DNA of 6,936 nucleotides from Octopus sinensis (taxonomy: Eukaryota), in NCBI RefSeq assembly GCF_006345805.1, contig NW_021828998.1:1-6936 (forward strand), written 5' to 3'. A program made the translations under genes and the position numbers. Below the pieces are notes generated by a model that saw only the letters and a list, made by a program, of their open reading frames with translations, did not search any database and was not told where the DNA came from. Numbering within the stretch: the stretch's first letter is position 1; every line of letters begins with the position of its first letter. Positions 1 to 6,860 of this stretch are shown here, piece after piece.

Positions 1-308
1 TGTGTTGTGGAGTGTGTGCGTGTGGTGTGTGTGTGTGTGGTGTGAGTGTGTGTGCGTGTGTGTGTGGGTGAGTGTGTGCGTGCGGTGTGCGTGTGTGTGT
101 GAGTGTGGTGTGTGCGTGCGTGTGTGTGTGAGTGTGTGTGTGTGCGTGCGTGTGTGTGTGAGTGTGTGTGTGTGCGTGCGTGTGTGTGTGCGTGCGTGTG
201 TGTGCGTGAATGTGTGTGTGCTTCTGTGTGTGTGTGCCTCTGTGTGTGTGGGTGCCTCTGTGTGTGTGTGAAAGAGAGAGAGAGAGAGAGAGAGTGAGAG
301 AGAGAGAG
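1..308. repeat. Degenerate (TG)n array followed by (GA)n
   Basis: TG/CG dinucleotide array at 1-270, including an exact 30-nt tandem unit (121-150 = 151-180), then (GA)n at about 272-308. Confidence 0.97.
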
Positions 309-2787: not shown

Positions 2788-2849
2788 CTGTAAACGGGAA
2801 AATATACAATGGAAAATATACAATAGATGCCTATATACATACATGCATA

Positions 2850-3364
2850 GACAAAGTTGGTTATATTAACATTGATGAGACAAAAAAATATTGGTGAAAC
2901 TTAAAAATTAAAACAGTCACCAAGTTAAAACACACCCAGCCAGATATTTGTGTGTGGGACCACAAGGTAAAGATATGTTCTGTTGCGGAAATCAGCTGCC
3001 CTCTGGACACCAAAGTGGTTAGGAAAATACAAGAGAAAGAGGACATTTATGGATCATTGATAAAGAATTTGCAAACCCAGTACCCAAGATACACTTTCAG
3101 CTTCATATTATTATTATTGGAGCAACATGATACGTACCAACCTGTCTAGAGCAAAGTATGGTTGAAGTCGGGTTTGTAGGGGAGAGAACGCAAATCCTTA
3201 ATTCACACGCTACAAATGATCACTACATTCGAGACTAGAAAAAAACTGCAAGACCTTCAGATTTAAAGGAAGATGAAGAAAACAAGATGCTTTCCTTCAC
3301 AACCTTCCTACCAAGGAGGTGGACGGTCGAAATTTATTCTAGATTATAAAGAGAAAGAGAAAAA
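2850..3364 (+). mobile_element. Second, divergent R4/Dong-like element: severely 5'-truncated, endonuclease end plus 3' UTR only
   Basis: Reading through TGA 2895-2897 gives KKYW*NLKIKTVTKLKHTQPDICVWDHKVKICSVAEISCPLDTKVVRKIQEKEDIYGSLIKNLQTQYPRYTFSFI. After a frameshift it reads IIGAT*YVPTCLEQSMVEVGFVGGERKSLIHTLQ, and after another CKTFRFKGR* (stop 3274-3276). It is colinear with the RLE at 5341-5722, roughly 40-45% identical by hand alignment. PD is at 2940-2945 and E at 2988-2990. The 5' boundary is approximate. Confidence 0.85.
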
Positions 3365-3437
3365 CATACATACATACATACATACATACATACATACATA
3401 CATACATACATACATACATACATACATACACACATAC
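3365..3437 (+). repeat. (CATA)n microsatellite between the two R4-like elements
   Basis: Near-perfect CATA array of about 18 units. It starts right after the first element's putative 3' UTR and ends where RT homology of the second begins. Confidence 0.97.
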
Positions 3438-4700
3438 TCCAGAAACTCTTGGATGGGAAAGCACCTGGAAGAGACTTGGTTGTTGGATACTGGAATAAGA
3501 GCTAACCTCCTACTGATCACGTCTTATCAAGCTTTACCAGCTCTCAAAGGGAACACTCGTATACCAGACTGGTTAGCTCTGGTAGAGACAAAATTATGCC
3601 TCTAATGCAGAACCACTCACACGGAAAAAAAACTACCGCCAATTGCATGCCAGAACTTAATGTATAAGATACATACAGCATGTTTAAACCTCTTCCTCCA
3701 AGACCATTGTGAAACCAATAACATCATCACAGCAGGACAAGCAGCTGGGAAGAAGGGAGTCTGGGGATGTGCCGAACAATTGTAAATAAACCAGGCTGTA
3801 ATGTTAGAGGTGCCGGAGCATAGAAGGAACCTAGTTTCAATATGGATGGACAACAAGGAAGCCTTTGGCTCTCACCCCAACTCACGGATGCTAGAGGTGC
3901 CTCGACTTGCTAAAGTGCCAGTGTGCATAGTCAAAGCCATAGCTGACCTCACTTCACCGTGGGCCACCATCATGAGGTTAAATACAAGGGTAACTGTATT
4001 ATCACTAATGGAATACAGTATCGCAAGGCATATTCCAAAAGGACAGCCTCTCTGTGATGTTGTTTATACTTTCTGTAAACCCCTTGTCGTTCATGTTAAG
4101 GAAGTCTGAAGGATGTCTCACTGGTTTACAAGGAAACAAAAATACCAAAATGACACACTGTTTCTTTGTGGGTGACTTAAAACTTTATGCAAAGAATATG
4201 CATGAGATAGGAAAATTCTTGACTTGGTTACAACATTCTCAAAGGATGAAGGGTTGGAGTTTGGTCAGGGTACATGTGGTTATATGGTTGTGAAAAGGGG
4301 GAAAACTGTAAACCAGACTAGCAACATCTCCATCAATGACTTAACTGTTTCCCCTATATCTGACAACGAATGTTACAGGTATCTAGGGGTGGATGAAAAC
4401 ATATCTTACAATGGCACCTGTAACAAAATACGTGTCACTGATAAGTATTACAACGAATAAAGAAAATTTGGAGCTCAGAACCTCTCTGCATTCAAAAACA
4501 GTAGCCCACAGTGTGCATACTGTGCCAGTACATTTGGTCTACTTGATTGGACACCTGATGAAATCCGAGCCATTAATGTGAAAAACCGGAAAATACTAAC
4601 AAGCACACATAATTTCCACATAAAACAGTGACGTAGACCCCTTACCTAAAACGAAAGCAACGTGACAGAGGCATAAAATCGAACCAAACTGCTTTGAATG
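3437..4700 (+). pseudogene. Disrupted reverse transcriptase region of the R4-like element
   Basis: In-frame stop TAA at 3783-3785 and frameshifts near 3638, about 4000-4025 and about 4222. The catalytic motif reads FVGD (GGT GAC at 4171-4176) instead of (Y/F)xDD. The listed ORFs 3801-4109, 4054-4293, 4224-4460 and 4393-4581 are pieces of this one ORF. Confidence 0.88.
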
Positions 4701-5131
4701 TCATATCATATCCCTTCGGATATGGTACATCTTTTAACCACCAAGTGTTGAAGTGCATCCCTTGACCAAGGTTTGCATACATGAAGCTGATAACATCATA
4801 AGAATTGAAAGGCAGTTCCTTGAGCAGAATTCCTTGTCTGATAACCTTAAATACATCCCCAAAGAAGTTACACGACTCTACCACAAGGTAACATCAGATG
4901 AAAGGATGAGTCTATATGAGCAGGAGACCATGCATGGATATGTTAATAAAAAAGCATCGAGATGATAGTAACATTGATCAGCAAAGCAGTATATTACGGA
5001 CCAATAATGGGATAACTAACTTCGACTTTGAAGGGTATGTGTTTGCAATCCAGGAACAGGAAATATCAACAAAGTACCTGATGCATAAAATGTATAGAGA
5101 CGCAGGAAAAGCAGCAAAATGTGATAACCGA

Positions 5132-5722
5132 TGCAGACTTTGTGTAGTTAAGACCGAAGATATCACCCACATCATAAGCAGTTGTTCGAAAGTGTCATCA
5201 TGGTTGTATCTACCGATGAGACGTGACGTTGTAGCTGGGGCACTATATGATGAAATCCGTCGGAAAGATAACCTCGAGGACAAAGAAATAACAACCCACA
5301 GTATGATAGAAGCCATAGCCACTCATAATAAAAAAAGGAGTTCTGGCGGAATGTACCAGTGAAGACCTCAATAAAATGTAAACACAATAGACCTGATATA
5401 ATGATTTGGGATAGAGAAACTGTGTACAGTTGTGGAAATTAACTGCCCGGTGGATGTTGATATAAAGCTGAAGATCAGTGAAAAAGAGAACACCTATGCT
5501 GAACTATTGAGAAATCTGCAGTTACTCTATCCAGATTACAACTTCAGGTTTATACCTGTAATTATTGGGTCACTGGGATATGTAACACGTTGCCTAAATA
5601 CCAATCTTGAGAAATTAGGCTTCTCAGAACCAGAAAGGAGAAAACTGATTCGAAGACTACAGATCCAATTCATCACTGGGACTGTAAAAATCTGTAAAAC
5701 TTTCCAGAAGTTTATCATTTAA
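5132..5722 (+). pseudogene. CCHC zinc knuckle and PD-(D/E)xK restriction-like endonuclease of the R4-like element
   Basis: CRLC-x8-H-x4-C at 5132-5185, then MRRDVVAG (RHD motif decayed to RRD), FWRNVPVKTSIKCKHNRPDIMIWD (from 5341; PD at 5392-5397) and VEINCPVD...EKENTY...IPVIIGSLGYV...CKTFQKFII*. Frameshifts near 5335 and 5420. Confidence 0.9.
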
Positions 5723-5765
5723 ATATATATGAGCCTGTCTAGATATGTAATTATATGCATGAGAA

Positions 5766-5810
5766 GACATACATAAAACATACATACATACAAACAAACA
5801 AACAAACAAA
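5766..5810 (+). repeat. (CATA)n/(CAAA)n short array inside the R4-like 3' UTR
   Basis: gacatacataaaacatacatacatacaaacaaacaaacaaacaaaa. Confidence 0.85.
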
Positions 5811-5918
5811 AATATTCTGTTGTTGATCTTGAAATTCCAATGAAGGAGTCTTGGATCAAGGTTAGAAACCGGCTCTTTCTCTATTGGCAAGAAATCTCGA
5901 AATAAAACTGAATAAAGA

Positions 5919-6050
5919 CATATATACATACAAACGTACGTACGTACATGCATTCATACAAACGTACGTACATACATACATACATACATACATACATACA
6001 TACAAACGTACGTACACGTGTGTATGTATGTATGTATGTATGTATGTATG
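5919..6050. repeat. Compound (CATA)n tail with a strand flip to (TATG)n
   Basis: CATA units are interspersed with three copies of CATACAAACGTACGTAC (5927-5943, 5955-5971, 5999-6015), followed by the palindrome ACACGTGT (6014-6021) and (TGTA)n at 6021-6050. Confidence 0.95.
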
Positions 6051-6398
6051 TTTGCATAAATCCGGTATACGCAACTGAAATCAAAATAGCCATCTATGTA
6101 TCACATTTAAAGTATGTACACAGTTGATAGGCAAATCACTGCAGTATTTTTCCTGAGATAACACCTCTTACAGATGTGCTGTGCTAAAAACAATATATAT
6201 GAGAAAGAGGGGAAAATTTATCCCAACAAAATCCAGCGGGAACTCCCCGGATCCATTTCAACGTTTTGGGTCTTTTCAATGACGCGTACTCGTAGCCAGT
6301 CACATGCTCCGACGAGCATTCACCGTGTCTGAGAGACGTAAAACAGATTAAAACATTTACCGATGTTGCCAATTGTGAGATTTAATTCTGTGACTTAC

Positions 6399-6460
6399 CT
6401 TTCTTTTGCATCTAAGAAGGCTTTGGCGAAGGGATTGTGTTTAATTTTCAGTGATGTGAT
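6399..6460 (-). CDS. bra: Brachyury (T-box transcription factor T) internal coding exon, end of the T-box domain
   Basis: Minus strand reads tgtctttcAG|ATCACATCACTGAAAATTAAACACAATCCCTTCGCCAAAGCCTTCTTAGATGCAAAAGAAAG|GTAAGT. The 62 nt translate to [20 protein letters not shown](R), phase 0 to phase 2. This is the conserved T-box C-terminal motif, and [10 protein letters not shown] is the Brachyury-type version (other T-box subfamilies usually have AKGF). Acceptor AG at 6462-6461 and donor GTAAGT at 6398-6393 are canonical. Confidence 0.95.
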
Positions 6461-6570
6461 CTGAAAGACACCGAAATACAGACTTATGAAACCATACCCT
6501 TAATCCATAAACTAATCAAAGGTGATTAAAATCAGGGATTGATTGGTTTGTAAATATGGAAACAGCCCAC

Positions 6571-6645
6571 GGGCAAATGGCGTAGTGGTTAAGAGCGCGG
6601 GCTACTAACCCCAAGATTCCGAGTTCGATTCCAGGCAGTGACCTG
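6571..6645 (+). mobile_element. tRNA-derived SINE-like head (Pol III A and B boxes), not a functional tRNA
   Basis: A box TGGCGTAGTGG at 6578-6588 and B box GTTCGATTCC at 6623-6632 sit at tRNA-like spacing. The anticodon-like loop is CT-ACT-AA (6602-6608) with a 3-bp GGG/CCC stem, resembling the GGACTGCTAATCC arm of tRNA-Ser(GCT). The acceptor stem does not pair, the T stem pairs only 3 of 5, and a simple-repeat tail follows directly. Confidence 0.8.
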
Positions 6646-6735
6646 AACAACAACAACAACAACAATAATAATAATAACAACAACAACAACAATAATAATA
6701 ATAATAATAATGATGATGATAATAATAATAATGAA

Positions 6736-6803
<68 letters not shown>

Positions 6804-6860
6804 TGGTGGCATGCTCTGCTCGCTCACTCAATAATAATAATAATAACGATAATAATAATT
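6646..6860 (+). repeat. (AAC)n/(AAT)n/(GAT)n compound microsatellite, the tail or landing site of the SINE
   Basis: Long trinucleotide array starting right after gtgacctg, interrupted by ggtggcatgctctgctcgctcactc at about 6805-6830. Confidence 0.95.

What the first reader, a model, noticed from the sequence alone, without database searches (positions are those of the whole stretch)
2832..6004. Two different R4/Dong-like retrotransposons stacked in tandem with (CATA)n at every junction: candidate microsatellite-targeting family
Seen: a decayed CATA run (tatatacatacatgcata, 2832-2849) precedes element 1, a clean (CATA)n (3365-3437) separates elements 1 and 2, and (CATA)n follows element 2 (5919-6004). 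Both elements are 5'-truncated at different points and share orientation. Their endonucleases are only about 40-45% identical by hand, so they are independent insertions of different families rather than a local duplication. Established: RLE-bearing non-LTR elements are often site-specific, and Bombyx Dong of the R4 clade inserts in (TAA)n repeats. Inference: a group of related elements targets (CATA)n/(TATG)n and regenerates its own target as a tail, so insertions pile up at the same site and seed microsatellites. I cannot tell whether this specificity is already described.
Basis: partly seen in the sequence, partly recalled or inferred. Interest (0 to 1): 0.75.

Follow-up and report, generated by a model that had tools for sequence, protein, structure and literature searches.

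The report
Microsatellite-homing retrotransposons stacked at (ACAT)n
Two dead, unrelated copies of Dong/R4-like jumping genes sit head to tail with (ACAT)n at every junction, and relatives in other genomes show that this lineage inserts into the tetranucleotide microsatellite that it also carries as its tail.

Summary
Element 1 (2850-3363) is the last ~140 codons plus 3'UTR of a restriction-like-endonuclease (RLE) LINE. Element 2 (3438-5917) is a decayed copy truncated at the start of the reverse transcriptase. Sense-strand (ACAT)n lies at 2832-2849 (16/18), 3364-3437 and 5918-6016. The two elements share no DNA similarity and their RLEs are 47% identical, so this is not a duplication.

Of 19 related copies with a readable 5' junction, 17 abut a microsatellite of their own tail motif. 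These include full-length solo copies with no LINE upstream (Argonauta hians L005, L030, L001) and 5'-truncated copies (L006). Sister lineages use (ACTT)n and stack in the same way (L004, L007, L008). A 34%-identical Diaphorina element sits between two (AAT)n arrays, as classic Dong does. L033 (ACAT) and L034 (ACTT) are 66% identical, which suggests a recent motif switch. A conserved 3'UTR hairpin with compensatory changes lies 45-60 nt before the tail.

Microsatellite-specific Dong elements are known for (TAA)n. I found no report of (ACAT)n or (ACTT)n specificity in RLE elements, but Repbase could not be checked. Verdict: a new variant of a known kind, of moderate interest.

The parts
2832..2849 (+). 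Short degenerate (ACAT)-like run (16/18). It is the likely remnant of the target microsatellite on the 5' side of element 1.
   Evidence: Sequence. Only one comparable run elsewhere in the window, and 0.005 expected per shuffled window. It directly abuts the start of element 1 homology.
2850..3363 (+). Element 1. It is a severely 5'-truncated copy holding the C-terminal RLE part (from about residue 1021 of ~1158) and the 3'UTR. It has one frame switch and two in-frame stops.
   Evidence: Translation and stitching. tblastn with P0002 matches 2862-3119. Closest RLEs are L005 Argonauta at 55% and L001 at 55%.
3302..3330 (+). Element 1 3'UTR hairpin (CTT, stem, 5-nt loop, stem, CGG), 35 nt before the tail.
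   Evidence: Alignment A2 and pair counts. Coordinates. The MFE fold of the last 90 nt contains it.
3364..3437 (+). (ACAT)18.5 at 97% purity. It is the tail of element 1 and also the 5' flank of element 2.
   Evidence: TRF. Element 2 homology starts at 3437 with no gap.
3438..5917 (+). Element 2. It is a 5'-truncated copy that starts at RT motif 0 (about residue 388). It has 8 frame switches and 5 in-frame stops.
- RT core: about 3636-4391.
- Catalytic FVDD mutated to FVGD: 4165-4179.
- CCHC motif: 5132-5185.
- RLE: about 5335-5719, with the PD motif at 5389-5403.
- Stop codon: 5720-5722.
- 3'UTR: 5723-5917.
   Evidence: stitched 769 aa. Pfam RVT_1 and zf-RVT below cut-off. R2 proteins are the best PDB hits at 3e-9. 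38-47% identical intact relatives. Motif coordinates.
5767..5814 (+). Internal (ACAT)3(AAAC)n run inside element 2's 3'UTR. It is either an internal microsatellite or the boundary of a third ~100-nt fragment (5815-5917). This is unresolved.
   Evidence: TRF. Position relative to the stop codon and hairpin.
5847..5876 (+). Decayed copy of the 3'UTR hairpin of element 2, 42 nt before the tail. The outer stem is kept and 3 of 6 inner pairs remain.
   Evidence: Alignment A2. Coordinates. The hairpin is not recovered in the MFE fold.
5918..6016 (+). Impure (ACAT)n tail or 3' flank of element 2, with ACGT and ACAA variants arranged as a 28-nt higher-order repeat.
   Evidence: TRF rows with period 4 and period 28.
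6021..6051 (+). Inverted (TGTA)7.8. Together with 5974-6016 it forms a perfect long palindrome. Its origin is unknown.
   Evidence: TRF. Fold at -50.5 kcal/mol. Only sub-threshold miRNA-family hits in Rfam. No RLE-LINE homology downstream.

Best explanation
The region holds two independent, dead, 5'-truncated insertions from two different families. Both families belong to one lineage of single-ORF LINEs with a C-terminal restriction-like endonuclease (Dong/R4-like). This lineage inserts into (ACAT)n microsatellites and carries (ACAT)n as its own 3' tail.

**Shown**
- The anatomy of the two copies.
- Their independence from each other.
- The same repeat, on the same strand, at every junction here.
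- The same pattern at both ends of relatives in other genomes.
- Sister lineages that do the same with (ACTT)n and (AAT)n.
- A conserved 3'UTR hairpin at a fixed distance from the tail.

**Inferred mechanism (target-primed reverse transcription)**
1. The protein's N-terminal three-helix domain and its RLE bind the repeat and nick the (ATGT)n strand.
2. The freed 3' end pairs with the (ACAU)n end of the RNA.
3. The reverse transcriptase, held on the RNA by the 3'UTR hairpin, extends from there and slips on the repeat, which gives tails of variable length.
4. Each insertion leaves the repeat on both sides and adds a fresh array. Later insertions of any family with the same unit therefore land next to earlier ones, and head-to-tail stacks build up.

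The order in which elements 1 and 2 arrived cannot be told.
For: **Window anatomy**
- Sequence, repeats, translations and motif coordinates.
- The elements share no DNA similarity and their RLEs are 47-48% identical.
- Element 1 groups with the ACAT-type elements L005, L001 and L002 at 53-55%.

**ACAT-type relatives**
- L001 has (ACAT)13 on both sides, with an (AT)25 array further upstream rather than an element.
- L002 has the repeat at both ends.
- L003 has the tail.
- L005, from Argonauta hians, has (ACAT)9+5 at the 5' end of a full-length copy and a decayed CATA(CA)n at the 3' end.
- L030 has (CATA)41 at the 5' end with unrelated sequence upstream.
- L033 has an (ACAT)24 tail.

**ACTT-type relatives**
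- L004 carries several elements of at least two families with (ACTT)n at each junction.
- L006 is a 5'-truncated copy behind (TTAC)75.
- L008, L009-L015 and L034 show the same pattern.
- In nine full-length ACTT copies the repeat ends 192-263 nt before the start codon.

**Link to classic Dong**
- The Diaphorina citri element L029 sits between (AAT)34 and (AAT)41.
- It is sister to the tetranucleotide clade, which has 73-76% bootstrap support.

**3'UTR hairpin**
- 94% of cells pair and 8 of 9 pairs show compensatory changes.
- 0 of 500 shuffles reach the observed value, and slid controls pair at 22-43%.
- Unbiased MFE folds of the last 90 nt recover the hairpin in most copies.

**Literature**
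- Dong targets (TAA)n, and the R4/Dong clade inserts into rDNA or microsatellites (PMC3812793, PMC7998251, PMC4640811).
Against: - The source genome could not be searched. The case for target specificity therefore rests on about 19 junctions from relatives that are 40-55% identical, not on copies of these two families.
- Many of the loci are ~4-kb metagenome contigs that end inside the repeat.
- Element 1's 5' repeat is only 18 nt.
- One copy (L012) has (AAT)17 at its 5' junction but (CTTA)n at its 3' end.
- One ACAT-type full-length copy (L033) shows no 5' repeat. Another retroelement on the opposite strand abuts its start codon there.
- The nicking strand, the role of tail pairing and the role of the hairpin are all inferred by analogy with R2 and other LINEs.
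Confidence: 0.8

Rival explanations
1. This stack arose in a single event. During one insertion the reverse transcriptase reached the broken 5' end of the element 2 RNA. It then jumped onto the (ACAU)n end of an element 1-family RNA and continued, so the array reflects template jumping rather than two separate homing events. The lineage could still be microsatellite-specific.
For: End-to-end template jumping is a known property of the R2 reverse transcriptase (my own knowledge, not checked here). The junction array 3364-3437 is very pure at 97%. Both copies show a similar degree of decay. In other loci, stacks mix families in the same way (L004, L007, L008).
Against: It needs RNAs of two families that are only 47% identical to share one enzyme. 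It is not needed once solo copies show repeats on both sides. It does not explain the 5' (ACAT)-like run before element 1.
Confidence: 0.12
2. (ACAT)n is only a tail. The elements insert at random, and the 5' repeats are the tails of neighbours or arose by chance in a very microsatellite-rich genome.
For: The window is full of simple repeats. Many LINEs carry short tandem-repeat tails without any target specificity. In stacks, each 5' repeat is also the upstream element's tail.
Against: Sense-strand (ACAT)n covers under 2% of the window, yet it sits at all three junctions. Solo copies L001, L005, L030, L006, L009, L034 and L029 have the matching repeat at the 5' end with no LINE homology or hairpin upstream. 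The strand of the repeat always matches the element's orientation.
Confidence: 0.05
3. The two RLE segments are a local duplication of one element that later diverged.
For: Same orientation, same tail unit, and close proximity.
Against: There is no significant DNA similarity between the two segments. Protein identity is 47%. Element 1 is closer to an Argonauta element than to element 2.
Confidence: 0.01

Closest known systems
Dong (Bombyx mori) and Dong-like elements of the R4/Dong clade
   Same: A single ORF with reverse transcriptase, a CCHC motif and a C-terminal restriction-like endonuclease. No N-terminal zinc fingers. Insertion into a microsatellite whose unit equals the element's tail. 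A (TAA)n-flanked Diaphorina relative is 34% identical and is sister to the group.
   Different: Published Dong targets are (TAA)n in insects, molluscs, cnidarians and an ostracod (PMC3812793, PMC7998251). Here the unit is a tetranucleotide: (ACAT)n, or (ACTT)n in sister lineages. Membership was not tested against named references.
Waldo (R1 clade; WaldoAg1/2, WaldoFs1)
   Same: Targets ACAY microsatellites, which include ACAT (PMC3812793).
   Different: Waldo carries an N-terminal apurinic/apyrimidinic-type endonuclease and belongs to the R1 clade. The elements here have a C-terminal RLE and no APE domain. If the target is shared, that is convergence.
Togen (NeSL clade) and microsatellite-specific HERO families
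   Same: RLE-bearing LINEs that are specific for a microsatellite: (TG)n for Togen, and unspecified repeats for some HERO families (PMC4640811).
   Different: They belong to different clades and use different repeat units. I did not test the relationship to them.
R2 (28S rDNA-specific)
   Same: The same enzyme layout. R2 proteins are the best solved-structure matches, at E = 3e-9 over the RT. The integration model is target-primed reverse transcription with recognition of the 3'UTR RNA.
   Different: R2 has N-terminal zinc fingers plus Myb and targets a unique site in 28S rDNA. It does not target a simple repeat.
Stringent-type LINEs with a 3' stem-loop plus a short tandem-repeat tail (eel UnaL2; from my own knowledge, not checked here)
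   Same: A conserved 3'UTR stem-loop at a fixed distance from a short tandem-repeat tail. The reverse transcriptase is thought to slip on that tail.
   Different: UnaL2 is an APE-type L2-clade element and has no reported microsatellite target specificity.

Membership tests
R4/Dong clade of RLE non-LTR retrotransposons | Single ORF with RT followed by a CCHC motif and a PD-(D/E) restriction-like endonuclease at the C-terminus, and no APE domain | tested here: met
   Intact relatives of 1146-1158 aa hit RVT_1 (1e-22 to 1e-26) and zf-RVT only, with no Exo_endo_phos. In window element 2 the CCHC motif is at 5132-5185 and the PD motif at 5389-5403.
R4/Dong clade of RLE non-LTR retrotransposons | N-terminal divergent Myb/SANT-like domain without zinc fingers (PMC7998251) | tested here: inconclusive
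   The N-termini have no Cys/His finger pattern. They share a conserved W...W three-helix domain, which is also present in the Diaphorina (TAA)n element. The AlphaFold2 model has pLDDT 82 and three helices. Foldseek against PDB gives nothing significant: the best E is 1.3, with Myb-like KNL-2 and the TRF2 Myb domain among the weak hits. Pfam and a PDB profile search found nothing.
R4/Dong clade of RLE non-LTR retrotransposons | RT phylogeny groups the element with named R4, Dong or Rex6 references rather than with HERO, NeSL, R2 or CRE | not tested
There is only indirect support: a (TAA)n-flanked insect element is the sister group in NJ trees, at 73-76% bootstrap. Dong-R4 LINEs are reported as abundant and active in octopus (PMC13282606, PMC8967140).
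R4/Dong clade of RLE non-LTR retrotransposons | Insertion into rDNA or into a microsatellite identical to the tail | tested here: met
   17 of 19 readable 5' junctions lie in the tail's own repeat (and the calls cited there).
Dong sensu stricto | Target is (TAA)n | tested here: not met
   The window elements and 7 related loci use (ACAT)n, and about 15 related copies use (ACTT)n. Among the fetched loci only L029 uses (AAT)n.
Waldo / R1 clade (ACAY-specific) | N-terminal APE-type endonuclease | tested here: not met
   No Exo_endo_phos hit in the intact relatives, and an RLE at the C-terminus instead.
HERO or NeSL clades | RT phylogeny with HERO or NeSL references, and for NeSL also N-terminal zinc fingers | not tested
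   No references were available. The absence of N-terminal zinc fingers argues weakly against NeSL.

The most novel reading that the evidence does not exclude
In this lineage the target may be chosen largely by the element's own RNA tail, with the nicked repeat strand having to pair with the tail's repeat unit. A one-base change in the tail unit would then re-aim a family at a different microsatellite: AAT, ACAT, ACTT or ACTC.

The lead comes from L033 and L034. L033 has an (ACAT)24 tail and L034 sits behind (TTAC)83. They are sisters with 100% bootstrap support and are 66% identical in the RT-RLE region. Their putative N-terminal DNA-binding domains are about 85% identical (my estimate from the two translations printed; no alignment was run), and the DNA encoding that region is 81% identical.

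If this holds, the lineage would be a natural, RNA-reprogrammable, site-directed retrotransposon.
Probability: 0.3. Interest if true: 0.75.

Novelty: new variant of a known kind. Interest (0 to 1): 0.55.

Why it matters
- **Microsatellite clustering.** In these genomes, certain tetranucleotide microsatellites would cluster with LINE fragments and would share flanking sequence. Such shared flanks are a practical problem for designing microsatellite markers.
- **Repeat-rich tracts.** The mechanism would show how head-to-tail stacks of unrelated families and very long arrays (75-83 units) build up. Dong-R4 LINEs are reported among the most recently active elements in octopus (PMC13282606).
- **A natural specificity series.** Closely related enzymes aimed at (AAT)n, (ACAT)n and (ACTT)n could be compared to ask what sets target choice in RLE retrotransposons, protein contacts or tail pairing. 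That question matters for current efforts to re-aim R2-type enzymes for gene insertion.

Tried and rejected
- **N-terminal domain.** Pfam, a PDB profile search and Foldseek gave no significant Myb assignment.
- **Rfam on the window.** It gave only sub-threshold miRNA-family hits on the (ACAT)n/(TGTA)n palindrome and on the (TA)n runs. I treat these as artefacts.
- **ARAGORN.** It finds no tRNA in the window, including the tRNA-like stretch near 6570-6645.
- **Other collections.** The viral contig scan found no relative. The bacterial/archaeal genome scan found only two distant RTs at 23-24% identity, which I did not use.
- **Source contig.** An exact look-up of six window ORFs found none in the protein collection, so the source contig could not be extended.
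- **UTRs and flanks.** blastn of the two 3'UTRs and of the flanks 2450-2849 and 6052-6560 against all fetched loci hit only the window itself.
- **Minus-strand element.** I looked for a minus-strand element to the right of the inverted (TGTA)n. There is no RLE homology there, and I saw no hairpin at the expected distance by eye.
- **Literature.** Searches for ACAT, CATA, ATGT or TATG repeats together with non-LTR elements found nothing relevant. Kapitonov et al. 2009 (PMC2829327) is not held.
- **Tree building.** The first tree run, with Biopython bootstrapping, timed out. I replaced it with a faster NJ and bootstrap. Deep branching among the ACAT lineages is unresolved, with support of 9-37%.
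- **(ACTC)n as a third target.** I considered and set this aside. It is seen at only one locus (L007), next to (ACTT)n, and may be a local variant of that array.
Full report
**1. What is in the window**

The window is eukaryotic and extremely rich in simple repeats. The finding's region holds the following features.
- A short (ACAT)-like run at 2832-2849.
- Element 1 at 2850-3363.
- (ACAT)18.5 at 3364-3437, with 97% matches.
- Element 2 at 3438-5917.
- An impure (ACAT)n at 5918-6016, with 82% matches and a 28-nt higher-order period.
- An inverted (TGTA)7.8 at 6021-6051.

Three-frame translation shows that both elements lie on the + strand.

Element 1 holds only the last ~140 codons of a restriction-like endonuclease (RLE), with the PD motif at 2937-2951, plus about 100 nt of 3'UTR.

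Element 2 starts exactly at reverse-transcriptase motif 0, directly after the repeat. It runs through the RT, a CCHC motif (5132-5185) and the RLE (PD motif at 5389-5403) to a stop codon at 5720-5722. Element 2 is dead:
- reading it through takes 8 frame switches and passes 5 in-frame stops;
- the catalytic FVDD motif reads FVGD at 4165-4179.

Pfam sees RVT_1 and zf-RVT only below their cut-offs. The best solved-structure matches are R2 proteins, at 3e-9.

**2. Is it more than chance, and is it a duplication?**

Perfect sense-strand (ACAT)>=3 covers 112 of 6936 bases. It occurs only at the two junction arrays and once inside element 2's 3'UTR.

The 18-mer before element 1 matches (ACAT)n at 16 of 18 positions. 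One other such place exists in the window, and shuffles give 0.005 per window.

The two elements are not copies of each other.
- Their RLEs are 47% identical.
- They have no significant DNA similarity.
- Element 1's RLE is closer to an Argonauta hians element (55%) than to element 2 (48%).

**3. Relatives from elsewhere**

A stitched translation of element 2 found intact or near-intact relatives at 38-47% identity. One of them is a protein of the octopod Argonauta hians. A second search with an intact relative, and a scan of metagenome contigs, added more. In all, 34 loci were fetched. About 30 copies in 24 of them belong to the group.

*ACAT-type copies*
- L001 is full length with (ACAT)13 on both sides. 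An (AT)25 array, not an element, lies further upstream.
- L002 has the repeat at both ends.
- L003 has the tail.
- L005 (Argonauta genome assembly) is a near-intact full-length copy with two in-frame stops. It has (ACAT)9+5 at its 5' end, unrelated sequence upstream, and a decayed CATA(CA)n at its 3' end.
- L030 is full length behind (CATA)41, with unrelated genes upstream.
- L033 has an (ACAT)24 tail. Its 5' end is obscured by another retroelement on the opposite strand.

*ACTT-type copies*
- L004, from a 9.7-Mb contig, carries several elements of at least two families with (ACTT)n at every junction.
- L006 is a 5'-truncated copy behind (TTAC)75.
- L008, L009-L015 and L034 show the same pattern.
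- In nine full-length ACTT copies the repeat ends 192-263 nt before the start codon. The repeat therefore sits at the element's true 5' end.
- L030 (ACAT type) and L034 (ACTT type) come from the same sample, so the repeat unit follows the element lineage and not the genome.

*The count.* Of 19 copies with a readable 5' junction, 17 abut a sense-strand repeat of their own tail unit.
- Window element 1 is a weak case, because its 5' repeat is only 18 nt.
- L012 has (AAT)17 at its 5' junction and is the one exception.

**4. Relation to Dong**

The Diaphorina citri element L029 is 34% identical to P0002. It sits between (AAT)34 and (AAT)41, which is the classic Dong behaviour.

In NJ trees of the RT-RLE region it is the sister of a clade that holds all the tetranucleotide-type copies, at 73-76% bootstrap. 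The ACTT types form a 79% clade. The ACAT types are mostly a poorly resolved basal grade.

The intact proteins have no N-terminal zinc fingers. Instead they share a conserved domain with two invariant or near-invariant tryptophans, and the Diaphorina element has it too. AlphaFold2 predicts a three-helix bundle with pLDDT 82. Foldseek gives no significant match, although Myb-like domains appear among the weak hits. This fits the divergent Myb/SANT-like domain reported for R4/Dong (PMC7998251), but it does not prove it.

I could not run a tree with named R4, Dong, HERO or NeSL references.

A full scan of 1.84 billion representative proteins found 802 clusters at E <= 1e-30. Only a few dozen of the best 150 are above 40% identity, and most of the rest lie at 27-36%. 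The group is therefore a small branch of a large clade.

**5. A conserved RNA feature**

In nearly all copies a two-tier hairpin lies 45-60 nt before the tail. It consists of CTT, a 6-bp stem, a 5-nt loop, the return stem, and CGG.

On an alignment of 12 copies:
- 94% of cells pair and 8 of 9 pairs show compensatory changes;
- no shuffle out of 500 reaches the observed covariation;
- slid controls pair at only 22-43%.

I picked those 12 segments by eye, which biases the test. As a check, unbiased MFE folds of the last 90 nt recover the hairpin in most copies, including window element 1. They do not recover it in the decayed element 2.

**6. Mechanism**

*Shown.* Repeats of one unit and one strand flank these elements on both sides. 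This holds for solo copies and for truncated copies. Different families share a target and stack on it.

*Inferred, by analogy with R2-type target-primed reverse transcription.*
1. The protein binds the repeat and nicks the (ATGT)n strand.
2. The freed 3' end pairs with the (ACAU)n tail of the RNA.
3. The RT is positioned by the hairpin. It extends from there and slips on the repeat.
4. Each insertion renews the target, so stacks grow.

For this particular locus a single-event origin by template jumping between two RNAs cannot be excluded. I give that about 0.12.

**7. A possible motif switch**

L033 has an ACAT tail and L034 has ACTT flanks. They are sisters with 100% bootstrap support and are 66% identical in the RT-RLE region. 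Their N-terminal domains are about 85% identical; I judged this from the two translations printed and ran no alignment. The DNA encoding that region is 81% identical.

This suggests a recent one-base change of the repeat unit with little change in the putative DNA-binding domain. It raises the possibility that pairing with the tail contributes much of the specificity. The evidence is one copy per family, so this is a lead and not a result.

(ACTC)n tails occur only at one locus (L007), next to (ACTT)n. They may be a local variant of that array.

**8. What is known, and novelty**

*Published microsatellite targets of LINEs*
- (TAA)n for Dong, in insects, molluscs, cnidarians and an ostracod.
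- ACAY for Waldo, which is an APE-type R1-clade element.
- AC for Mino, TC for Kibi and TTC for Koshi.
- (TG)n for Togen, in the NeSL clade.
- Unspecified repeats for some HERO families (PMC3812793, PMC4640811, PMC7998251).

Dong-R4 LINEs are reported as abundant and recently active in octopus, with no mention of target preference (PMC13282606, PMC8967140).

Full-text searches found no report of (ACAT)n- or (ACTT)n-specific RLE elements. Repbase and Dfam entries, and Kojima and Fujiwara 2004, could not be read. The specificity may therefore already be on file.

I rate this a new variant of a known kind and of moderate interest.

Noticed in passing
window 5974-6051: (ACAT)n runs straight into an inverted (TGTA)n. 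Together they form a near-perfect palindrome of about 78 nt (-50.5 kcal/mol). It draws sub-threshold hits to several microsatellite-like miRNA families. Its origin is unknown, and no RLE-LINE homology lies to its right.
   Followed up: partly
window 6565-6860: A tRNA-like stretch with A-box-like and B-box-like motifs (ggcgtagtggttaag ... gagttcgattcc) is followed by long (AAC)n and (AAT)n arrays. It looks like a tRNA-derived SINE with a (TAA)n-type tail, which could point to a Dong-type (TAA)n partner LINE. ARAGORN and Rfam do not call a tRNA there.
   Followed up: partly
window 5767-5917: An internal (ACAT)3(AAAC)n lies inside element 2's 3'UTR. The last ~100 nt (5815-5917), which hold the hairpin, could instead be a third, extremely truncated insertion.
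   Followed up: no
window 2797-2824: A perfect 14-bp tandem duplication, GGAAAATATACAAT x2, lies 8 nt upstream of the (ACAT)-like run that precedes element 1.
   Followed up: no
L004 3700-4386 and 9026-9708: A non-coding unit of about 683 bp occurs twice at 95% identity. Each copy is followed by (ACTT)n, and one is also preceded by it. It lacks the usual hairpin. It may be a non-autonomous passenger of the (ACTT)n-type LINEs.
   Followed up: partly
L007 6005-6201, 10489-10520, 15007-15225: Two different families at one locus both end in (ACTC)n, while their closest relatives elsewhere end in (ACTT)n. The upstream flank is a compound of (TACT), (TTAC), (CACT) and (ACTC). This is either a local mutation of the array or tails copied from the target.
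   Followed up: partly
L012 1-51 and 4134-4161: A 5'-truncated ACTT-type copy has (ATA)17 at its 5' junction but (CTTA)n at its 3' end. It is the one clear exception to the rule that the same repeat lies on both sides.
   Followed up: no
L008 8468-9467 and 12187-13198: The 3' part of one element and its compound repeat flank recur about 3.7 kb downstream with the same spacing. This is a local segmental duplication, not an independent insertion, so I did not count it as one.
   Followed up: partly
L006 10166-10800: This element's 3' region holds about three copies of a ~120-nt internal repeat (...GGGTTATT.CCC..GG...AAGCCCC.G.AG.AACGGA...), and no clean tail was found downstream.
   Followed up: no
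window 1-270, 1519-1648, 1657-1671, 2394-2447: Very long (TG)138 and (TA)65 arrays, a G15 run, and a C-run followed by (TA)n. The surrounding sequence is unusually dense in simple repeats.
   Followed up: no
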